A stretch of 64,000 nt of DNA from Pocillopora damicornis (GCF_003704095.1 NW_020843846.1:124001-188000), one strand, 5' to 3'. Counted from the stretch's first letter, positions 44,017 to 61,225 are shown. Notes: a model not told the origin generated them from the sequence alone. Numbers and translations are program-made.

Positions 44017-50027
<6,011 letters not shown>

Positions 50028-50087
50028 CTCAGTGTTATTCTAAATTTCGTTTTACAAAGAATTAAATCAAATGTTTACAACAGGATT

Positions 50088-50112: not shown

Positions 50113-51473
50113 AAAAGTGCAAGTGTTAGTTCCCAGTCTGCCCCTATTACTTCAAGCTCACAATATTCAAATTGCCGACTTGTTTATGTATCTTGACAAA
50201 GGAGAGTTTTGTTTGGATTGGGGTTTCCAAGGAAATTTCAATGAACAATTACGGCTCTATTATGCTTCCCTACGTAGGAAGCAGGAGGTGGGAAGCCTAT
50301 GATTGCTTAGTGCGTTATCATAATCCCAGTCTGCCGAAGATTCTCAGATTTAGCGAAGGTAATCTACCCCAAACGACTGATCTTTGCTGCAGATTGGAAA
50401 ACAGGTAATGGTATTTGTTGACTGGATCAAGAAGGTCGCAAGGGAATATATTTGTCATGGCAGAGAGCGAAATATTTTCCCATCCGGTCCGACCTGACTT
50501 ATCTGGGCATTTTGTCATATGGCAGTCACTCTCTTAGACTGACATGGTAAAGATTGTTAGTTACACATGACGATCAAATTTCAACTCGGCATGCAGTTCT
50601 ATTATGAAACTGCATGGCGACAAGCGCAAGAGAATGTAAGCATTACCACTCGAGGCTATCGCAGTTACGACAATTACAAGCTTGCAAATACACTAAATTA
50701 CAAGGGCCCAAAGACACTAAAATAATTCAGATCAAGTGTAAATTCAGAAAGCAATTCATTGCTAAACTTAACAGCGGAAATATATACAACGGCGTAATAT
50801 GTGACTTTAAACACAGTCCATGTACTGTAAGATTTTACGCCACTAACTCAGTCGGTAGATTCATTATAATAAATTAATATAAAATTAAATTATTCACTGA
50901 CGTAAAATTTACATTATATATATATCACCGACTGGAAGAAATTACGCTTAATAACGACCCTTCTGAATCTTTTGTTATCCATTTTGTTGTGGCAACTGTG
51001 AGCGACAACAAACTTAGACTCTAATCTCAGTGATAAGGTGTGATCATCTTTTTCCTATCAGACCAGTTGTCCATGCTACAAAATTTTAGCCCTTCAACTC
51101 CCAAGATTCGATAGTCTATTCTTCCCTCCAGCTATGACACACTTGTAAATTGGTTATGAGAATTTGGTGTTAGATCAAGCAAATATCTGATAAGTCTGAG
51201 TATTCTCATTACCTATTTGCTGGGAAAATGTATGGATATTTGAAAGAGAAGTTACATGGTAATCACCTCTGGCAGTTGAAGTGTGGACTCTAATTTTTCA
51301 CTTGATTTTTCTTTATATTTCAGAGTCATGAGATGTCAAAAGTGACCCTAGATGTGCCTGTTATTCAGGCATTTTAATCTGCATAATTCATCCTCCATAC
51401 CTGATACTTCTGTTAGTAAACTTACGGGAAAGCAAGGCCATTATACACAGTCTAATAACAACTTGATTCTAAA

Positions 51474-54400
51474 ATGGGTTGTGCCCCATCCTCCCAAAGT
51501 TTTCAAGTCCACGAAAATGAAACCCGTCTTTTGCAAGAAATAGACCGTCTGCGAAGTATAGAGCAGTCACGCCAGGCAGAAATCAGCAAGCTGCAAGTAG
51601 AAAATGAAAAACTGCGACAAGGCCAAGTGAATGGTGGGTATGCAATGATAAAGCGATCAGACTCTCCTGAAGACGACGGCCATGAAATGTTAGTGAAGGA
51701 GATTGAGAGATTGATATTGGAGCAGAGTGAAAAAGAAAATGAACTCAGTGAACTGAGGAGGACAAATGAGCAGCTGAACTTAACTTTGCAACAAAGCCCA
51801 CCTCAAGTTCAGGTATTTAACAATACACAAACCTGCAAACACTTCCTCAGGGTCTAAAAAGTGTGGTCACAATGAATTGATTTAACCAATTTAAACTGAT
51901 GATCTTGGTAAAAAAAACTGAATGAACTTTCACTATATTCTGGGTACAAAAAAATAATCCAAGTTGTAAATTGTCGTTGTTGTTGAAGGGTACCACATAG
52001 AATTGGCTTTGTTACATTCAGGATACATTCAGGATTGATAGGATTGGATAGGGGAGTGGGGATGACACAGTGGTGAGAGGGCTCACCTCGCACCACTGTG
52101 GTTTGGGTTCAATTCCTGGATCTGGGGTCACATGTGGGTTGAGTTTGTTGTTGGTTCTCATCCTTGCCCATAGTGTCTTTTTCAGGGTCCTCTGGTTTTC
52201 CCCCCTCCACAAAAACCAACATTTCTAGTTCCAAATCAGTCTCAAAAAAGTAGACAAGAAGAACCACTTAATGGAATGTCCAATGCTAAATTCCTATTTA
52301 TTATTTATTTAATTAATGGAATGGAATGAGCATCTCTAAATTTGGATCGCAATGTGTTTTCATTCATTTTAAACAAAATACCATTAAAACACAGATGATT
52401 GTGTTAAAGCTGTGAATATGAAGAAAATCCAGCAATTATGAAGTTACACATGTAGATGAAATACACACCAAACATTATTTGTGTGTAGTCCATGACATAC
52501 ACAGTGGGTGTCAGATTCAACCTTCATGATTTTTGTCACTATGTTGTCTGAATTGTAAACTTGGCCTCAAGGATTTGAATTCTGACTCATCCAGCTATAT
52601 ATTGCCTGTTTGTCCCCAAACCAATCTACAAGGTGGTAATAGGAATTTTAAAAAACTCTGCTATTCTTCAAGGAGACTGCTTTTTGGTTAGCATAATGCC
52701 CAAAACGAGACTTACTTGTGATGGATAACTGTACAATATAATTATTCTTTTGCAGCAGTTTGTTAATAAGAACAGAAATCTTCCAAAAGTTGGAGATCCA
52801 GTGAGTATTTAAAGGATTAATTCTAAAGCTTCATGAAATAATCTTTGTAACTGTATATAGTCATATTGAGGATCTCTCACTTTGTGTGGTACTAAATTTA
52901 CTTATATTTTCTATGGGAAAAAAAAAAGACAAAAAAATTAATTCATGAGGGTGTCACAATTACAGTAGACCAATTAGTTTTCATCATGGCCACTGATTAA
53001 AAACACACAGATAACTGGAAAAAAATAACGCAAATAAAAAGGTTCCATGATTTAAAACCCCAACTGGCTGGAGGCAAACCATTTGGCTATTTTTAAGTTG
53101 AGTCAAGGGTTTTGGAAAAATACTGGTAAGATATTAAAAACTTTGAGGAGTTGAAGCGTCAATGCCAACTCCCCCCTATNNNNNNNNNNNNNNNNNNNNN
53201 NNNNNNNNNNNNNNNNNNNNNNNNNNNNNNNNNNNNNNNNNNNNNNNNNNNNNNNNNNNNNNNNNNNNNNNNNNNNNNNAGTCAGTCAGTCAGTCAGTCC
53301 GTCAGCCAGACAGTCAGTCAATCAGGCATTCAGTCAGTCGGTCGCTCTGTCAGTCAGTCAATCCATGAGTGAAACATAAGGATGGGCAGTTATTCGTTAG
53401 GTTGGACAATCACTTAGTTGTGACACCTATCGTCAGCTTTATTCACAATCACCGATTTGCTGCTGGGTTTTATGGGAGTTTTCGCGAACAAAGTACATCC
53501 AAAACAATATGCATCAACAAGTACTTACATGTTTGGCTTTATGTGCATTCTCTGAATTCAGCCAGCAATAACTGATAAACACGTCAGCGGAATCTCGGAT
53601 TCCAGCGTCCGAGGTATCTCCAGCACTTGGCAAATCTGGAAAAATTTTAAAAAGTTCAAGTCACTTTGTGAACTTAATAGACTGACAAATTTAGGTTGAA
53701 ATATAGAAACAAGAATGGACGTTACGTTTTAAATGTTAACCTTATGGATGAAACTTCGTGTGACCATTCAAATGAAACCTCGTGAGCAATATTTTTATGC
53801 GGTACTGTTTATTATGCTTCTCGTGCTTATTCCAACGTTTGAAATTGAGGACAAACCCTTGTATGCGACCATCTAAATGAAAGCTATTGGACAGTACTTT
53901 CACATGTGTAACTGTGTATTACGCTGTGCAAGGTTGTTCTCACTTAAAATTCTGTGGATGAACCCCTTGCATGTCGCTATTCAAAAGGAAGCTACTGTGG
54001 GGTAGAACTGTTTTGTTACGCTAGACAAGGTGGCTGTAACTTTAAAGTCGGTTGGTACTATCCTTGTATGTGACCGCAAAAATACAAAACATACCTTGAA
54101 CGCTTCCCAATTCTTCGGGAAATTTAACTTCAGGCACGCTCTTCTTAACAGCTCGCAGAAGCTCTGTCATCTTAGAATCCTGTACATCTCTGTTGCTGAA
54201 GTGAATGTACACTTCACCGGCAATAAGCAAACCCACAACTGTCATCATCCATTCGAAAGATCCACTGCCTACTACAACGGGAATAACCGGTTTTCTCGCG
54301 GTCTTCTTAGCATACTGGAACTCTTGACGGCAAATTTCATCCCTAGAAAGAAAAAAGATGGTTATAAGTGGTGATAAGGAAACCAGATTTTCTTGGTCCG

Positions 54401-56519
54401 TGAAGGAGCGCTTTATTCTGCAACAATCACACGCGAAACTGAACGTCTTTGTTGCAGATGTTGCAAGAAACTGCGAACGAATTCTCGGGCCTGCCTCACC
54501 ATACTGACATGTACACTTAGTTGTGGTGTTAGTTTTGAAATCTCGATGGACAGCTGTAAAGGCGACCAGGTTCCTTGGATAATCTTGAAAAGAAAAAACT
54601 AGGTAACAACGCTCCAAACTACGACAGTTTTGGTCGCTATGTCGACTCGAAAAAAAGGTTTTGTTGACTAAATATGCNNNNNNNNNNNNNNNNNNNNNNN
54701 NNNNNNNNNNNNNNNNNNNNNNNNNNNNNNNNNNNNNNNNNNNNNNNNNNNNNNNNNNNNNNNNNNNNNNNNNNNNNTTTCATAACTCAATGGGAAATTT
54801 CTCTCTCTACAATTAAACTCCTTTGCCTGATTCTAGTGGATGCTATCTCTTGTTGAATCAATTCAGCCCTAAGCTGATTCCTGTGTTCCTGGACTATTAA
54901 AATTCTACCTATATTTAGTAACATCATGGAATTCTGAAAACGATCACCCTTGAAATGAACGAACAACCATTCAGATGTAAAAGATAACGCCAGGCCTCTT
55001 TCTTACACAATATTAAACTTGCAGTGACTAATCTTTACACGGCAATTTTAGGGAGGCCATTTTGCCTCTACTTGGTCACGCAGAGGAAGCGAGAAGCTAC
55101 CGAGCGCCTGTCATAGGCGATCACGTGATCTCTCATCACCAACAATGGGCTTACTACGCGGCGACCATTGTGAGCTTCGACCGCGAGACTTTGAAATACA
55201 CAGTGGACTGGGACGATGGAGATCCTACAGGGAAAGTCCAGTCATATAAGGTATGCAGAGAAATTAGGTGCATCTTGGGTAAAAACCGAAGTTGGAGAGA
55301 AATAAAGAAGTTTTGATTGTTAAAAAAATCCTCCCTGACAGCTGCTTAAGAAATGTATATGGAATAGTATGGAGAATGTGGATTCTGATGTTAGAGTGTG
55401 AAGGTCAAAGCCAACCTGAACTCTGGTTTACTTTAGGACCTGGCCATTGACAAGATCCCAAGTGAAGACCAAGTGGGTGTGGACTCCATTGTGTTTTTCC
55501 CCCAGGGAGGTTACGGAGCTACCGAGGGGAATAACACCGGGGGAGTCAGATACCATGAAGGAGTCGTCACACGTGTCTACAAGGTTTGTCATAGCTTAGT
55601 GTAAAATGATTGAATGGTTCGTTGGATACACGTTCAATCCTAATTTTAATAACAGCCATTTTGATAGGCTCTATTTCCGCCGCTCTCTCGTTTCCGGTCC
55701 TCGCTCCTCCCCGAGAAGAGAGTTCGGGGATGGGAGAGAGGGAAGGAACGCGGGCTCATATTCCCGAACAGCGGCTGGTAATCGAGACTAACATTTTGAC
55801 ACAAGCAGTATCATGATGTATAGAACCGAGAATAAGCCTGAGTCTGAAAATTCGATGATCTTCAAGATAGTGTGAGGAGTACGATCGGATAACGGTGGTG
55901 TGTCAGAAAGGTTGCGTCATTGTAGTTCAATTCAACCCGCTCAGCTCGCGCGCGGCCTTAACGCAAACGACACGCGTGAGAGAAATCAGACACGCTCCGT
56001 TTGTTTCCCTCGCGTCTGACTTCTTATTGGCACGTGTTCTCCGGGAGCCTGCCCTCATTATTAGTGCTTTGGCACGAGCGTTTCTTAGCCCGCAGGAAAG
56101 TGGCCATCCTTGAGCAAAACGAGCCAAGGAGAGGTCTGCAAGGGGTCTGGCACTAGTAGTGCCAATCCTTCAGCGATCTTCTCCCCGACTTGTCTAAAAT
56201 TTTCCCGCGGGCGGAAAATGCACGTCCCGCAGCACTAATGATGAGGGTCTGCTCTCGGGCAAGACAAAAAAATTTCAGAATTAACAGTAGACGCCCTTAT
56301 CGCAACCTTTTTAATTGAATCGGTTTTTTTTTTAATTCTTTTTAGGATTCCTCTGGAGCCTGCCTATATGATGGGCATCACACCAAAGGAGCAGAGGACG
56401 GAAAATGGGTCACTTACAAAGATTACAATTACAACTTCAATGGCATACCTCTGCAAATGCTTAGAATCGCTCCCAACGCCATGGATGCACTCATGGCTTG
56501 CAAGGAGGCCTTTAGTTGA
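51474..56519 (+). CDS. Uncharacterised protein: MGC lipidation motif, coiled coil, (gap) and C-terminal tandem Tudor-like domains. Exons 51474-51812, 52756-52800, [gaps], 55052-55250, 55437-55583, 56346-56519
   Basis: MGCAPSSQ start; heptad-rich exon 1; exon 2 ends LPKVGDP. Later exons read PVIGDHVISHHQQWAYYAATIVSFDRETLKYTVDWDDGD, VGVDSIVFFPQ...RYHEGVVTRVYK and CLYDGHH...LRIAPNAMDAL*. Junctions are GT-AG and in phase. Joining the two halves across the gaps is inferred. Confidence 0.75.
52051..52310 (+). mobile_element. tRNA-derived SINE
   Basis: A box TGACACAGTGG, B box GGTTCAATTCC, body TGTGGGTTGAGTTTGTTGTTGGTTCTC...TTTTCCCCCCTCCACAAAAACCAAC and an (ATTT)n tail. Confidence 0.75.
53280..53362. 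repeat. (CAGT)n microsatellite at a contig end
   Basis: Directly visible next to the gap. Confidence 0.9.
53529..54342 (-). CDS. Two spliced exons (54342-54095, 53635-53529) encoding the C-half of one TIR-like domain and the start of a second
   Basis: DEICRQEFQYAKKTARKPVIPVVVG...W..TVVGLLIAGEVYIHF (TIR alphaC-betaD-betaE) splices in phase 1 to DLPSAGDTSDAGIRDSADVFISYCWLNS (TIR box 1). Splice sites are canonical. Confidence 0.8.
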
Positions 56520-58260
56520 AATTTCTTCAACATCTCGTGTTTCTTAGTGTTTGAATATTTTGTACGGTCTCCTTCGCGGTTGTCTTTTGAGATATCACGC
56601 GATGCTCTTCCTCCACCCCCCTCTTATCTCTCTTCCCTTTCAAATAAAGAAGACGAGCGTTGCGTGACAATTCAGAGAAGACGAGAAGCATTGTTCGCGC
56701 CAGCCGGAATAACTACCCCCCGTTTATAGGCCCTCTTGACACCCTTTACGAAGTAGTGTATGCCCAGGGCTGACAAGCGCTAGTTAACGGTATATGTTTT
56801 TTTTTTTTTATGGGAAATGGTTGTGAGACAGGTGTTAAGCGCATGAAACGTTTGTACACCAGAGATTCAGTATTTTACAAGGTTTAATTTACAGTCAAAT
56901 TATAGAGTAAAGGGGGTTTCAATGGAGTGATAAAATTTTGGCCAATTTACGGCAAAGGTTAATACCTTTCAACCAGAAATGTTTTTACAGTTAACTTTTT
57001 TTACAACATACGGCTTAATGTCTTGGTCACTTTACGGGTAATGGTTAACCCCTATTAACTATTAAAAGGCAGGCCTTTTCTAATAAACTGAAGAGTAAAT
57101 ATTTGTTTTGTGGAAAGTCCAATCTAAACCAAAATAAATTCAACCTTTGCCCTCTGTACTACATTGTACAATATTTGCCGACTAGTTTATTAACTACTGT
57201 GCAAGTGGTAGAAACGAGAATTACAGTTGAAGTATCAAAAAACGTAAAGTCTCTTCACCCCTCCCCCCTCGGTGAGTTGAAACAGAATCCATATGACCTT
57301 AGCTAGATCATTTCTCTTGAGAGGGGACAGGTAAGCGGGGAACAAGTGAGTGAATTACTCTCCTAATATTCGAAAAGAAGTTACAGGATCTGAAGACAGT
57401 TTCAGAATGTCTCTGGGTTCTCAAGTGCTGTTCTCTTTCGAGGGAGCAAACTGGAGACATCTCGAGCGTGTTCGTTAATATTTGCTTAATTTTGTGTCCT
57501 TTTGAAAACAAAAATTTCACCTTGAATGACCTTTTTTGGCTGACAACATCGCCCATCCACTCCCCTACTGGACCACTCATCATGCGCGATTCTTGACAAC
57601 CCTTGCGTGAAGCTGTCACAGCTAAGCTTCTCAAGTGAGTTTGGTGCTCTAATTACATTTATTAGGAGCAAGATCTTGAATTTCATCGTCTTGACGTGAA
57701 AGCAAGGTTTGTGATGAATAATTTTACAACTTTGTAGTTGATTATGAATACTGTAGCGTACCATTTGTAATGAATAAAGAGGCTGAATTGCAAATGGAAA
57801 TATGGTGCCCACAGATGGAGGTCTTAGAAGATAATTTGGGTTCATTATGTTAATCGGCCATAGTAGAGAGATACTGAGACAATTCTTAAACTGGCGTTTC
57901 AACAGTTAGCCCTTCGTCCGAGCGAGGAAGGCCTACTGCTCGAAACGTCAATTCAAGAATATCTCTGCGGTGTCCAATTTACGTTGTCACCTCACTGTAA
58001 AAAACCAAATATGCAAATCACATTTTCGGTGTTCTTGGATTAATGTCCGGTTCGATTTTTGACGTTTTTTAAACAATGCTTCATGGAAACGACCTTGGAA
58101 CAAAAACCATTCGATACATACATCAAGAGTTTTTCTTCTCTGGTTCCAAGACAGTAGATTCATCAGTCCGAATTGTATCATACAGTGTAATTTAAAAAGT
58201 ACACGGCGAACGCAGTTTCCCTGCCTGAAGGAGTTTCGTAATAATTTATTCGAGTTATTG

Positions 58261-58925: not shown

Positions 58926-59508
58926 GAGTGAAGAAGAAATGAGTACCGAGTAACCTGGTAACAACTTAATGGCAAAAATGCTACAAAGTTTTAAAATGAT
59001 TTAAACAAATTAAGAGAGACCCAGAAACGACAAGCAAACTTCGACAGGAGAAAAGAATTATTTCAATCAAGAGAATATATTCTCATGTTGAAACAGATTA
59101 GAAAAGATGAATTTAAGGAGAAAAATTAAGCGTGGAGGTTATTTTGATATTGCGGTGTTGAGACGAGTTTGACAAAGGGATGCGCCTTTGGAATCACGGG
59201 TTTTAAAAAGATTTTTTCTAGTGTTATGTGTATGCTTTTTTGTTGTTTGTTTTTATTTAATTATTTTTTCAATTATTTAGAAAATAATACTTGGTACTCC
59301 TGATGGTTGATATGGATATTTAGCCGCCACACACCATAATCCTTATAGAACTGAAGACGCATCGTGCACTCCAATTGCTCTCGCGCATCCTCGATTTGTT
59401 TACTAAGAACGTGTGGAAAGATTGATAGTTAACTGAGCAAAGTTTTTTAATCAGTCTGACTTATAAATTTATTTTACTTTGTTTTTCCATTCGCTCAGCT
59501 CTTGAGAA

Positions 59509-61225
59509 ATGATAAGCAGAACGGCTTTACGCCTTTTCCTCGGTCGTCATAGCACCCGCCGGTCAGCGTACTCTACTAAAACGGCTCATAAAATTGGAAT
59601 CATCGGCTTAGGAAATGTCGGCTCAACAGTCGCAAAGAACCTTCTTAAGTCAGGTTTCACAGTGTCCGCCTTACTCGACAAGGATCCAAAAGTGGGGCAA
59701 GATCTACCTGGGGATATACCACGCCCAAAGACACCACGTGAGCTGGCTGCCATGTGTGACGTAGTCACAACAGCTCTCCCTGCCCCACCCCATGTTAAAC
59801 AAGTCCTGTTGGGAGAGGACGGGGTATTGGCAGGGCTGCGGTCAGGAGGGGTATGGATTGACCATTCAACCACGGATTATCAGCAGACTTTGGACCTTAC
59901 TGCAGAAGCTGGTATGTGTCTTAGGGCAAGAACCTTTTACAAGAGAGTGTAGTTAGAATGAGATAAGGTGGGCCCCCGGATAGTGTGGTTTGGTTATAAT
60001 TTCGGTGAAATCCCAAGCGATATCCCGGCAGGGGTACCCAGCCACCATACGTATTCCAGGGCGGGATCCCAGTGTGGTTCTGAGCGGCAACACAACGGTA
60101 CCATGGACGCGATCCCAGACGTCGTGGAATATATTTCTCTGTTGCCACTGATTTCCCTTTCCACCAAAAGCATTAATGGGTACCTCAGAACTGCGAGGGA
60201 AACAAGGAAATGTGAAAAGGCCAGCCATCGCAGTTTGCTTACCAAGTTTTCCTTATGGTTGAATGGAGTTCAATTGACACTCTCTATATACTCTCTATAC
60301 TCCTTAGTGGAGAAACACCGTAAAGGAAAAGTGGGGCTGGAATCAAGGCTTGTTAATTGTTTGTATACAGCCCAGCAGCGTTCAAATTCTTGGGCCACTT
60401 TTCACTTTATAAGTCCCGATGAAGTTCTCCTTATAATGCCGTCTGCGATACAACTTCTTGCGCGCAATATTATATTAAAGCTTGTTATAAGAGATTAAGA
60501 CGTGGATTAAACGATTTTCAAGGATTTGAATTACACTCGAGCTTATTATTAACTCATATTTTGCCTCTGAAGCTAAGAAAGGCATCAAAGTTCTTGAGGC
60601 GCCCGTCACAGGAGGTATGGCTCTTCTCAAGCAAGGTAAAATGACTGTACTGGTCGGAGGAGACAGGCAACTCTTCGAAGACTGCCTTCCTATTCTACAA
60701 CAGAGCGGTAAGAAAGTGCTGTACATGGGAGCGATGGGGAGTGCTACCATTGCAAAGGTTGTCTCTAACATGATAGCTGCTGTTAATGTCGTTACCATGA
60801 CCGAAGCCATGTTACTGGGGAAAAGGGGCGGTGTCGATTTAAAATCCCTTTTTGATGCCATTAGATTTAGCGCTGGAAATACGTATACGTGGGAGACGGA
60901 AGCTCCTTTGGTATTTAATGGAACGTACGATCCAGATTTCACCATTGGGCTCCACTGCAAGGACTTGAATCTTGGGTACCAGCTCGGACGTAAGTTTAAT
61001 GTCCCCATACAGATACTAGCCCACGCAGAACAGATCTACAACCGCGCCCTTTACAAGTTTGGGGATGAGGTAGGCTCAACGTCTCCTGCAAAGCTTCTGC
61101 AAGACGAATTAGAAGAAACTTTGCAGGTTGAAGGATTCGAGGATTGGACGTATACTATTGAACATGTTGAAGACTCCATGGCCGTTGTGCACACAACAAA
61201 AGAGAAGGTTTACGGACAGAAGTAA
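59509..61225 (+). CDS. NAD(P)-dependent beta-hydroxyacid dehydrogenase (3-hydroxyisobutyrate DH / tartronate-semialdehyde reductase family), ~351 aa. Exons 59509-59911 and 60573-61225
   Basis: Rossmann IGIIGLGNVG, WIDHSTT, LEAPVTGG, catalytic Lys in ATIAKVVSNMI, and F...LHCKDL. Phase-1 GT-AG intron. Arg/Ser-rich N-terminal extension without acidic residues. Confidence 0.92.

What the first reader, a model, noticed from the sequence alone, without database searches (positions are those of the whole stretch)
51474..56519. Putative membrane-anchored TIR-TIR-Tudor protein: an unusual immune/NADase-type architecture
Seen: the gene starts MGCAPSS (Gly2/Cys3/Ser6, a myristoylation plus palmitoylation pattern), followed by a coiled coil and the start of a Tudor-like strand (LPKVGDP). 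It ends with two Tudor/SH3-like barrels that have aromatic-cage-type residues (WAYYAATI...YTVDWDDGD). Between these halves lie exons for two consecutive TIR-like domains. Known: TIR domains act as innate-immune scaffolds or as NAD+ hydrolases (SARM1, plant TNLs, bacterial Thoeris), and Tudor domains read methyl-Arg/Lys. Inference: this is one protein with the order lipid anchor - coiled coil - Tudor - TIR - TIR - tandem Tudor, possibly a receptor-independent membrane signalling enzyme gated by methylated ligands. I do not recognise this architecture from characterised proteins.
Basis: partly seen in the sequence, partly recalled or inferred. Interest (0 to 1): 0.85.

Follow-up and report, generated by a model that had tools for sequence, protein, structure and literature searches.

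The report
Lipid-anchored Tudor-TIR-TIR-Tudor coral protein
This is one real, expressed coral gene for a 799-residue protein with a fatty-acid anchor motif, a coiled coil and two immune-type TIR domains flanked by two methyl-mark-reader-like Tudor modules; the family is conserved from choanoflagellates to sea squirts and I found no study of its function.

Summary
The assembly is wrong here, though. The two TIR exons lie on the minus strand, in a 1.4-kb contig between the two N gaps.

RNA contigs from four studies join exon 1, exon 2, about 732 nt that are absent, the two minus-strand TIR exons, about 405 nt that are absent, and three Tudor exons. So the contig is inverted, and both gaps hide coding exons (aa 129-373 and 492-627). 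These exons are found nowhere else in the assembly.

A 799-aa transcript-derived protein matches all seven exons at 96-100%. The Stylophora ortholog shows the full architecture: MGC motif, coiled coil, tandem Tudor, TIR1, TIR2, tandem Tudor.

Named members come from corals, anemones, jellyfish, Hydra, tunicates, sea urchins and choanoflagellates. All are labelled uncharacterized, and no paper was found.

New here:
- The ordered TIR1/TIR2 pair also ends LRR-Roc-COR proteins.
- TIR2 keeps a strict SxNCxxE motif, while TIR1 often loses the Glu.

The function is inferred: a membrane-tethered TIR module gated by the Tudor cages. Whether it is an enzyme or a scaffold is untested. The scan's only other note on this locus (s1-760935) agrees.

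The parts
51400..51473 (+). 5' UTR, at least this part. An in-frame TAA lies at 51456-58, just upstream of the start codon.
   Evidence: RNA contigs are colinear from 51400 or earlier, and X16 record 6 has a further 106 nt upstream. Sequence.
51474..51812 (+). Coding exon 1, aa 1-113. It holds the MGCAPSS N-myristoylation/palmitoylation-type motif, then coiled-coil helices.
   Evidence: ORF. The GT..AG joint 51809/12 to 52753/56 is seen in 4 runs. It is 98% identical to P0121 aa 1-113.
52756..52800 (+). Coding exon 2, aa 114-128 (QFVNKNRNLPKVGDP). It holds the first strand of the N-terminal tandem Tudor.
   Evidence: Joints. It is 100% identical to P0121 aa 114-128. The ortholog continues ...KVGDPVLAMW... 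into a Tudor barrel.
53180..53279 (.). Assembly gap 1. It hides the exons for aa 129-373: the rest of the N-terminal tandem Tudor and the N-terminal half of TIR1. That is about 734 coding nt plus introns.
   Evidence: About 732 nt of RNA contig lie between exon 2 and the TIR-a exon and match nothing on the stretch. Nothing else in the assembly matches the ortholog.
53280..54677 (-). A 1.4-kb contig placed in the wrong orientation in the scaffold. It begins with an (AGTC)n microsatellite at 53280-53360.
   Evidence: 'Opposite strands' joints 52802>54342 and 53527>55052 are seen in 3-4 RNA runs. Tandem repeat.
54095..54342 (-). TIR-a exon, aa 373/374-456. It covers the C-terminal half of TIR1 and the linker. 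The Glu at the catalytic position (CRQE) is the codon at 54323-54321.
   Evidence: Translation. TIR_2 profile positions 68-120 match at E 0.058. It is 100% identical to P0121 aa 374-455. It is the top hit of the 1.84-billion-protein search.
53529..53635 (-). TIR-b exon, aa 456-491. It covers the linker and the first strand of TIR2 (DVFISYCWLNS).
   Evidence: The joint 53635>54095 has CT..AC ends, which is GT..AG on the minus strand, and is seen in 4 runs. The phase-1 junction makes a GAT codon with the preceding exon. It is 100% identical to P0121 aa 457-491.
54678..54777 (.). Assembly gap 2. It hides the exons for aa 492-627, the rest of TIR2 including its SxNCxxE motif. That is about 407 coding nt plus introns.
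   Evidence: About 405 nt of RNA contig lie between TIR-b and the next exon and are not on the stretch, in X2, X5 and X16.
55052..55250 (+). C-terminal tandem Tudor, exon a, aa 627/628-693. This is the first barrel, with cage-type residues H, YY, W and DDGD.
   Evidence: Tudor_3 scores E 2.3e-5. It is 100% identical to P0121. The joint 55248/50>55435/37 is GT..AG in 4 runs.
55437..55583 (+). C-terminal tandem Tudor, exon b, aa 694-742. It covers the linker and the first half of the second barrel (FFPQGGY...).
   Evidence: It has a weak DUF4819 hit. The last 13 nt differ in the transcripts of runs X2 and X16.
56346..56519 (+). C-terminal tandem Tudor, exon c, aa 743-799, plus the TGA stop at 56517-19.
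   Evidence: The joint 55581/83>56344/46 is GT..AG. It is 100% identical to P0121 aa 743-799.
56520..56600 (+). 3' UTR. It continues beyond the stretch that was laid.
   Evidence: RNA contigs cover up to 56545 and run over the end of the stretch.

Best explanation
SHOWN (about 0.97). Window 51474-56519 is one expressed, single-copy coral gene. Its mRNA encodes a 799-aa protein: MGC acylation motif, coiled coil, tandem Tudor, TIR1, TIR2, tandem Tudor. The scaffold misrepresents the gene. The 1.4-kb contig between the two 100-N gaps is inverted, and both gaps hide coding exons.

INFERRED mechanism (about 0.4 as a whole).
- N-myristoylation of Gly2 and palmitoylation of Cys3 hold the protein on the cytosolic face of a membrane.
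- The coiled coil pre-assembles it into oligomers.
- The two 53BP1-like tandem Tudor modules carry conserved cages: W/H, Y/F, W and two invariant Asp. They bind a cationic ligand of the methyl-lysine/arginine type.
- Ligand binding changes how the central TIR1-TIR2 pair packs.
- The pair works as an asymmetric unit. TIR2 has an invariant SxNCxxE motif with the Glu at the catalytic position of NADase TIRs, so it is the active partner that cleaves NAD+ or makes a nucleotide signal.
- TIR1 often lacks that Glu in relatives. It would be the structural or regulatory partner.
For: Gene structure:
- RNA contigs from 4 studies give the exon order, the strand flips and the sizes of the missing pieces. 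The ATG-to-stop length is 2400 nt.
- P0121 (799 aa) matches all seven exons at 96-100%.
- The ortholog finds only this locus in the whole assembly.
- The published Pocillopora damicornis assembly is 234 Mb and HiRise-scaffolded. That fits G000's size and the 100-N gaps.

Architecture, in the Stylophora ortholog:
- TIR_2 scores 82.7 bits in two stretches and Tudor_3 scores 43.2 bits in two stretches.
- The AF2 model has mean pLDDT 81.9.
- Foldseek's top hit is the 53BP1 tandem Tudor (E 4e-5), with SETDB1, UHRF1 and SGF29 also listed.
- TIR2 aligns to the Hydra TRR-2 TIR at Z 16.5 and to the SARM1 TIR at Z 15.4. Identity to SARM1 is 20-23%, matched among the listed rows only by TIR-STING and RPS4 at 21%.
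- The best PDB sequence match is the Cat1 TIR NADase.

Anchor:
- 25 of 50 family members start with the PROSITE-type myristoylation pattern, 21 of them with Cys3. They include choanoflagellates and tunicates.
- One choanoflagellate member has a PH domain instead.

Cage:
- W162/W683, D164/D685 and D166/D687 are each present in at least 45 of 50 members.

Asymmetric TIR pair:
- The TIR2 Glu is present in 25 of 26 members. The TIR1 Glu is Q or H in six of 26 members, including four choanoflagellate sequences and a Hydra paralog.
- The same ordered TIR1-type/TIR2-type pair ends 12 large proteins. The five that were scanned are LRR-Roc-COR proteins.
- In all 12, the second TIR keeps SxNCxxE and the first usually lacks the Glu.
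Against: - No enzymatic, binding or localisation data exist for any member.
- The Trp of the WxxxE motif is, to my knowledge, important in SARM1, plant and bacterial NADase TIRs. Here it is replaced by an invariant Asn in TIR2 and is variable in TIR1.
- The Glu is also kept in non-enzymatic TLR TIRs (own knowledge), so it does not prove catalysis.
- Structural neighbours include scaffolding TIRs (MyD88, IL-1RAcP, TLRs) at nearly the same Z as the enzymes.
- Tudor cages on a membrane-bound protein have no obvious methylated partner. The last cage position is Asp rather than the Tyr of 53BP1.
- TIR2's motif, most of both TIRs and the first Tudor module are not in this window. They are inferred from the ortholog.
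- The TIR1-TIR2 contact test could not be run (see Tried and rejected).
Confidence: 0.42

Rival explanations
1. The gene and architecture are as above, but the TIR domains are non-enzymatic scaffolds. The protein would be a membrane-tethered adaptor comparable to myristoylated TRAM or PIP2-bound MAL. It would nucleate TIR-TIR assemblies with TLR/IL-1R-like receptors or MyD88. The Tudor modules would recruit downstream partners.
For: - MyD88, IL-1RAcPb, IL-18Rbeta, TLR15, TLR2 and MAL TIRs align to TIR2 at Z 13.8-15.3. That is within about 1-2 units of the enzymes.
- The canonical Trp of WxxxE is absent.
- An N-myristoylated TIR adaptor already exists in vertebrates (TRAM; own knowledge).
- A PPxY motif in the TIR1 loop of 18 of 50 members suggests regulation by protein-protein contacts.
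Against: - The strict SxNCxxE conservation in TIR2-type domains, together with degeneration of the same position in TIR1-type domains, is the usual pattern of an enzyme/pseudo-enzyme pair.
- The family is present in choanoflagellates. To my knowledge these lack a canonical TLR-MyD88 pathway.
- The best PDB sequence match and the most identical structural match are NADases: Cat1 and SARM1.
Confidence: 0.3
2. The protein is mainly a chromatin or nuclear methyl-mark reader, like 53BP1, UHRF1 or SGF29. The lipid anchor would only sequester it until it is released. The TIR domains would serve as oligomerisation modules unrelated to immunity or NAD+.
For: The closest folds for the Tudor modules are all histone readers. 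Cage positions are conserved.
Against: - No nuclear localisation feature or DNA-binding domain was found by Pfam in the anthozoan members.
- The acylation motif, or a PH domain in its place, is conserved at the N-terminus.
- The TIR pair is more strongly conserved than the linkers, and it is shared with the LRR-Roc-COR proteins that were scanned, which show no Tudor domain.
Confidence: 0.08
3. The TIR exons belong to a separate or nested gene on the minus strand, or to a misplaced contig from elsewhere. On this view the 'architecture' is an assembly chimera.
For: The exons lie on the opposite strand between two gaps. On the genome sequence alone, this was the natural first suspicion.
Against: - Single RNA contigs in three runs (X16, X5, X2) span the + strand exons and the TIR exons in one frame.
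- A 799-aa product matches every exon.
- Orthologs in more than 15 named species have the same order.
- The splice phases fit.
Confidence: 0.02

Closest known systems
LRR-Roc-COR-TIR-TIR proteins of invertebrates (probably the 'ecTIR-DC 14' class cited in PMC6321704)
   Same: They carry the same ordered two-domain cassette. Their first TIR scores best against this family's TIR1. Their second TIR scores 61-99 bits against TIR2 and keeps SxNCxxE.
   Different: In those proteins the cassette is the C-terminal output of a Roc-COR GTPase with LRR, ankyrin or PLAT domains (1200-3300 aa). They have no Tudor modules and no N-terminal acylation motif. Their first TIR usually lacks the Glu that the coral TIR1 keeps.
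SARM1 / TIR-1 (ARM-SAM-TIR NADase)
   Same: It has a TIR_2-type TIR. Sequence identity among the structurally aligned TIRs is 20-23%, at Z 13-15.4 and rmsd 2.2-2.3 A over about 128 residues; only TIR-STING and RPS4, at 21%, come as close. It shares the Glu at the catalytic position and pairs an oligomerisation domain with a TIR.
   Different: This protein has no ARM or SAM domains, has two TIRs instead of one, and is flanked by Tudor modules. An N-terminal acyl motif takes the place of a mitochondrial targeting sequence. The Trp four residues before the Glu is Asn here.
53BP1 / Crb2 tandem Tudor (also SETDB1, UHRF1 TTD, SGF29, KDM4A)
   Same: Two consecutive Tudor barrels. It is the top Foldseek hit (E 4e-5). 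Pfam Tudor_3 is met in orthologs. The cage-type positions W/H, Y/F, W and D are conserved.
   Different: The second barrel carries a long insertion with invariant FPQG.Y and H.G motifs. The last cage position is Asp rather than Tyr. The module occurs twice per protein, in a lipid-anchored cytosolic context rather than on chromatin.
TRAM (TICAM2) and MAL (TIRAP), the membrane-targeted TIR adaptors of vertebrates (own knowledge)
   Same: In each, a TIR protein is held at the inner face of a membrane by an N-terminal lipid or lipid-binding signal.
   Different: Those adaptors have a single TIR, no Tudor and no coiled coil. They are restricted to vertebrates and depend on TLRs. No sequence relationship beyond the TIR fold was tested.
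Bacterial TIR NADases (Cat1, SPARTA TIR-APAZ, AbTir, ThsB)
   Same: Cat1 is the best sequence match in the PDB (E 1.9e-5). SPARTA and AbTir TIRs align at Z 14-15.
   Different: The similarity is weak. PADLOC and NCBIfam models give nothing above threshold. The domain context is eukaryotic.

Membership tests
TIR domain (Pfam TIR_2 PF13676 / TIR PF01582) | Profile match above the curated cut-off | tested here: met
   On the window exon alone the result is inconclusive: E 0.058 and 14.3 bits, covering only the C-terminal half. The ortholog of the same gene scores 82.7 bits against a cut-off of 28, in two stretches. P0121, this gene's product, carries PF13676 and PF01582.
TIR domain | Flavodoxin-like alpha/beta fold that superimposes on solved TIRs | tested here: met
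   In the AF2 model of the ortholog, residues 474-635 align at Z 16.5 (rmsd 2.0 A, 124 aa) to the Hydra TRR-2 TIR and at Z 15.4 to the SARM1 TIR. TIR1 was not searched on its own.
NADase-type TIR (SARM1, plant TIR, bacterial TIR) | Glutamate at the start of helix alphaC, following the 'S..(W)xxxE' context | tested here: met
   TIR1 has CRQE in the window, with the Glu codon at 54323-54321. TIR2 has NCR(I/M)E in orthologs, with the Glu in 25 of 26 members. The positional equivalence rests on the motif context and on the Cat1 alignment, not on a residue-level superposition.
NADase-type TIR | Trp four residues before the catalytic Glu (WxxxE) | tested here: not met
   TIR2 has an invariant Asn (N567 in ortholog numbering). 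TIR1 has Ile in corals and is variable elsewhere.
NADase-type TIR | NAD+ cleavage activity | not testable with these tools
   This needs recombinant protein and an NAD+ consumption or product assay.
53BP1/Crb2-type tandem Tudor (Pfam Tudor_3 PF18115) | Profile match and a two-barrel fold | tested here: met
   The window exon 55053-55250 scores 24.6 bits against a cut-off of 25.8, just below. The ortholog scores 43.2 bits in two stretches. Foldseek's top hit is the 53BP1 tandem Tudor, with SETDB1, UHRF1 and SGF29 also listed.
53BP1/Crb2-type tandem Tudor | Complete aromatic cage for a methylated lysine | tested here: inconclusive
   Three aromatic positions and the key Asp are conserved in both copies. 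The position of 53BP1 Tyr1523 is an invariant Asp (the 53BP1 numbering is from my own knowledge).
N-myristoylated / palmitoylated proteins | M-G-{EDRKHPFYW}-x-x-[STAGCN]-{P} at the true N-terminus, with a neighbouring Cys | tested here: met
   MGCAPSS fits the pattern. An in-frame stop lies 5 codons upstream within the transcribed exon. The pattern is present in 25 of 50 relatives, 21 of them with Cys3. The lipid modification itself cannot be tested here.
SARM1 orthologs | ARM repeats and two SAM domains before the TIR | tested here: not met
   No ARM or SAM hit was found in any of the 10 family members scanned.
ecTIR-DC families of Gerdol et al. 2017 | Listing of a Tudor-TIR-TIR-Tudor family in that catalogue | not testable with these tools
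   The paper is not held. Papers that cite it do not mention Tudor.

The most novel reading that the evidence does not exclude
This would be an ancient, pre-animal signalling device. A lipid-anchored heterotypic TIR pair has one catalytic TIR with a non-canonical SxNCxxE site and one pseudo-enzyme partner. Its NAD+-consuming or nucleotide-signal-making activity would be switched by tandem Tudor cages reading a methylated (or otherwise cationic) ligand. That would be a direct link between protein methylation and TIR signalling. The same TIR pair would also serve as the output of Roc-COR GTPases.
Probability: 0.22. Interest if true: 0.85.

Novelty: new variant of a known kind. Interest (0 to 1): 0.62.

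Why it matters
Animal TIR biology is known almost entirely from TLR/IL-1R adaptors and SARM1. This gene belongs to a family with named members in choanoflagellates, cnidarians, sea urchins and tunicates. The coral assembly holds only this one locus; Hydra has at least two paralogs. No named vertebrate, arthropod, nematode or mollusc member appeared among the best hits. The family combines two TIRs with four Tudor barrels and a membrane anchor, and I found no functional study of it.

The asymmetric TIR1/TIR2 cassette, shared with Roc-COR proteins, gives a concrete hypothesis: one catalytic TIR and one regulatory TIR. It can be tested in tractable systems such as Nematostella, Hydra, Ciona and Salpingoeca rosetta. 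The result bears on how TIR enzymes evolved between bacteria and animals.

On the practical side, the finding flags a scaffold error at this locus. An inverted contig and two gaps hide 381 codons, which will break any gene model built on this assembly.

Tried and rejected
- Nested or separate minus-strand TIR gene: rejected.
- Paralogs or unplaced scaffolds holding the missing exons: none found.
- tRNA or SINE call in intron 1: ARAGORN found nothing.
- Literature: ten full-text searches (Tudor+TIR, ecTIR-DC, locus names, coral TIR repertoires) found no paper on this family. Gerdol 2017 is not held. The supplements of two citing papers gave nothing on Tudor.
- ESM Atlas: two calls failed because the machine was busy. 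The call with the S. rosetta member returned only generic TIR clusters with scores under 0.8, so it is uninformative.
- PADLOC and NCBIfam: nothing above threshold.
- Complex prediction on TIR1 versus TIR2 of the ortholog: the machine was unreachable in nine tries (and one more). There is no verdict, so the claim that the two TIRs touch rests on evolutionary evidence only.
- The 11-letter variant at the end of exon 55437-55583 in runs X2 and X16 is not a micro-exon from this window. I read it as allelic or species variation.
- Left out on purpose: a joined spliced protein model, any filling of the N gaps, and any read-out of the gap-encoded residues of P0121.

Full report
WHAT IS IN THE SEQUENCE

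The window is eukaryotic, with GT..AG introns and about 38% GC. It belongs to a 234.35-Mb assembly of 4393 scaffolds. The RNA runs that hold it are labelled coral. The size and the 100-N gaps fit the HiRise-scaffolded Pocillopora damicornis assembly (PMC6208414).

On the + strand:
- An ATG at 51474 opens MGCAPSS... An in-frame TAA lies five codons upstream. Exon 1 runs to 51812.
- A 45-nt exon 2 (52756-52800) ends ...LPKVGDP.
- Three further + strand exons (55052-55250, 55437-55583, 56346-56519) encode the Tudor-like barrels and end in TGA.

The TIR-like pieces are on the MINUS strand, inside the 1.4-kb contig bounded by the gaps at 53180-53279 and 54678-54777:
- 54342-54095 encodes DEICRQEFQYAKK...PVIPVVVG..., the C-terminal half of a TIR.
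- 53635-53529 encodes ...DVFISYCWLNS..., the start of a second TIR.
- The two are joined by a canonical minus-strand intron with matching phase.

Pfam on single exons gives Tudor_3 at E 2.3e-5, TIR_2 at E 0.058 (half a domain) and coiled-coil families for exon 1.

THE GAP QUESTION

I laid Logan RNA contigs of four runs from four studies on 51400-56600.

Single contigs (X16 record 6, 3200 nt; X5 record 15; X2 record 12) contain, in this order:
1. exon 1 (+)
2. exon 2 (+)
3. about 732 nt that lie nowhere on the stretch
4. 54342-54095 (-)
5. 53635-53527 (-)
6. about 405 nt that lie nowhere on the stretch
7. 55052-55248 (+)
8. 55435-55581 (+)
9. 56344-56545 (+)

The joints 52802>54342 and 53527>55052 are reported as 'opposite strands' in 3-4 runs. 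All other joints are GT..AG.

The ATG-to-stop length in X16 record 6 is 2400 nt, or 799 codons plus the stop. My hand-derived splice phases agree. Exon 2 ends in phase 0. The TIR-a exon needs two preceding nt. The TIR-a/TIR-b junction makes GAT. TIR-b ends in phase 0. The exon at 55052 needs two preceding nt.

So the letters are not continuous across either gap. The middle contig is inverted in the scaffold. Gap 1 hides the exons for aa 129-373 and gap 2 those for aa 492-627.

A search of the whole assembly with the Stylophora ortholog finds only the exons of this locus. The missing exons are therefore absent from the assembly, not misplaced.

A transcript-derived protein of exactly 799 aa (P0121, 114 member sequences) matches the seven exons colinearly at 96-100%.

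I used P0121 only for coordinates. I did not read out its gap-encoded residues, fill the Ns or build a joined model. Every exon was searched separately, by reference.

THE FAMILY

A HMMER scan of 1.84 billion representatives with the TIR-a exon gave an 804-aa top hit, P0001. Its cluster holds Stylophora pistillata XP_022808838.1, and it is 79-98% identical to the window exons.

In P0001, Pfam finds two TIR_2 stretches (82.7 bits) and two Tudor_3 stretches (43.2 bits).

AlphaFold2 on a 50-sequence family alignment gives mean pLDDT 81.9, with these elements:
- helices at 14-49 and 70-110
- beta barrels at 131-276
- an alpha/beta domain at 291-444
- an alpha/beta domain at 477-637
- beta barrels at 654-800

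Structure searches:
- Foldseek's best PDB hits are the 53BP1 tandem Tudor, SETDB1, UHRF1 TTD and SGF29. For the TIRs they are RUN1, RPV1, SARM1 and Hydra TRR-2.
- VIA-align gives Z 16.5 (Hydra TRR-2) and Z 15.4 (SARM1, 20-23% identity) for residues 474-635. Identity to SARM1 is matched among the listed rows only by TIR-STING and RPS4 at 21%.

The N- and C-terminal Tudor modules are 49% identical to each other. TIR1 and TIR2 are 29% identical.

So the architecture is acyl motif, coiled coil, tandem Tudor, TIR1, TIR2, tandem Tudor.

DISTRIBUTION

Named members:
- Stony corals: Stylophora, Desmophyllum, Montipora, Acropora
- Sea anemones: Nematostella LOC116604300, Actinia
- Jellyfish: Rhopilema
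- Hydrozoans: Hydra (two paralogs) and Clytia
- Tunicates: Ciona LOC100182474, Styela, Clavelina
- Sea urchins: Lytechinus, a divergent subfamily shared with Clytia
- Choanoflagellates, four species: Salpingoeca rosetta PTSG_10079, S. infusionum, S. helianthica, S. macrocollata

All are labelled hypothetical or uncharacterized. No vertebrate, arthropod, nematode or mollusc name appeared among the 81 best rows. That is suggestive but not proof of absence.

FEATURES THAT BEAR ON MECHANISM

(a) Anchor.
- 25 of 50 members begin with the PROSITE-type myristoylation pattern, 21 of them with Cys3. They include tunicates and choanoflagellates.
- Several of the rest look N-terminally truncated.
- S. 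helianthica has a PH domain instead, and another member has EF-hands.
- Medusozoan-type members place a C2H2/Di19-type zinc finger right after MGC.

(b) Tudor cage.
- The positions I equate with the 53BP1 cage are W136/H659, Y143-F144/Y664-Y665, W162/W683, D164/D685 and D166/D687. The equivalence rests on my own knowledge of 53BP1 numbering.
- These positions are kept in 40-49 of 50 sequences.

(c) TIR pair.
- The Glu at the catalytic position is present in TIR2 in 25 of 26 sequences, in an invariant S-x-N-C-x-x-E context.
- In TIR1 it is Glu in most animals, including this coral (CRQE, codon 54323-54321). It is Gln or His in six of 26 members, including four choanoflagellate sequences and one Hydra paralog.

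(d) Shared cassette.
- The next-best hits of the TIR-a exon are 1200-3300-aa proteins. The five that were scanned are LRR-Roc-COR proteins ending in two TIRs.
- In all 12 tested, the second TIR scores 61-99 bits against family TIR2, while the first scores only 5-39 bits. The first TIR scores better against TIR1 than against TIR2.
- The second TIR keeps SxNCxxE. The first mostly has a hydrophobic residue at the Glu position.
- The ordered TIR1-type/TIR2-type pair is therefore an old two-domain cassette with divided roles.

(e) PPxY.
- A PPxY motif sits in a TIR1 loop in 18 of 50 members: anthozoans, tunicates and choanoflagellates.
- This is a possible WW-domain/NEDD4-type handle. In this gene it would lie in the hidden part.

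(f) Missing Trp.
- The Trp of the WxxxE motif is absent. TIR2 has an invariant Asn there.

INTERPRETATION

Shown:
- one gene
- its exon order
- its expression in four independent RNA data sets
- its architecture
- its deep conservation

Inferred:
- membrane tethering by dual acylation
- oligomerisation by the coiled coil
- ligand reading by the Tudor cages
- an asymmetric TIR pair in which TIR2 is the active partner

I put about 0.4 on an enzymatic output (NAD+ cleavage or a nucleotide signal), about 0.3 on a pure scaffold or adaptor, and about 0.1 on a nuclear-reader role. The rest is unknown. The conserved Glu is not proof, because TLR TIRs keep it too (own knowledge). The missing Trp argues for a non-canonical site or for no catalysis.

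NOVELTY

The proteins exist in databases as unnamed predictions. I found no paper on a Tudor+TIR protein in ten full-text searches. Two subscription catalogues of invertebrate TIR proteins could not be read.

I class it as a new variant of a known kind: TIR signalling proteins, here with an unusual sensor and anchor set. The shared TIR1/TIR2 cassette and its SxNCxxE signature are the most useful new observations.

The scan's other note on this locus (s1-760935, 'CRQE keeps the catalytic-position Glu') agrees with what I see. I add that TIR1 is the less conserved of the two at that position.

Noticed in passing
window 52050-52270 (intron 1): A high-copy repeat. RNA-contig depth jumps here, and many contigs with loose ends start or stop at 52128-52167. 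The sequence has a tRNA-like B-box look (GGTTCAATTCC), but ARAGORN calls no tRNA. It is probably a SINE-type element.
   Followed up: partly
window 56034-56083 and 56216-56265 (last intron): A 50-nt inverted repeat, 74% complementary, with 132 nt between the arms. It looks MITE-like. Low-level RNA contigs with many mismatches map nearby.
   Followed up: partly
window 55571-55583 (end of exon Tud_b): In runs X2 and X16, and in the representative P0121, the last 13 nt of this exon are replaced by other letters. That changes about 4 residues (...TRVYK in the window and in Stylophora). Runs X1 and X5 carry the window's version. The variant letters occur nowhere in the window. It is probably an allele or a sibling-species difference.
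   Followed up: partly
window 53280-53360: An (AGTC)n microsatellite, about 20 copies, lies exactly at the edge of gap 1. It has very high and messy RNA-contig depth, and it is a likely reason for the contig break.
   Followed up: no
window 59506-59949 and 60530-61222 (+): The downstream neighbour is a 3-hydroxyisobutyrate/6-phosphogluconate-dehydrogenase-like gene. Pfam gives NAD_binding_2 at E 6.7e-21 and NAD_binding_11 at E 2.1e-27. It is split into at least two exons.
   Followed up: partly
window 48921-50039 (-): An open 373-codon stretch on the opposite strand lies 1.4 kb upstream of the start codon. It is rich in Ser, Asp, Glu, Lys and Arg and has no Pfam hit. It may be a divergently transcribed gene.
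   Followed up: partly
window 51327-51354 (5' UTR): Several upstream ATGs lie in other frames, including a 63-codon uORF from 51352 that overlaps the main start. The main ATG has a strong context (A at -3, G at +4).
   Followed up: no
P0064, P0171, P0179 (not in the window): A divergent subfamily without Pfam-detectable Tudor is shared at 57-62% identity between the sea urchin Lytechinus and the hydrozoan Clytia. That is oddly close for such distant animals. It could be contamination, gene transfer or strong constraint.
   Followed up: no
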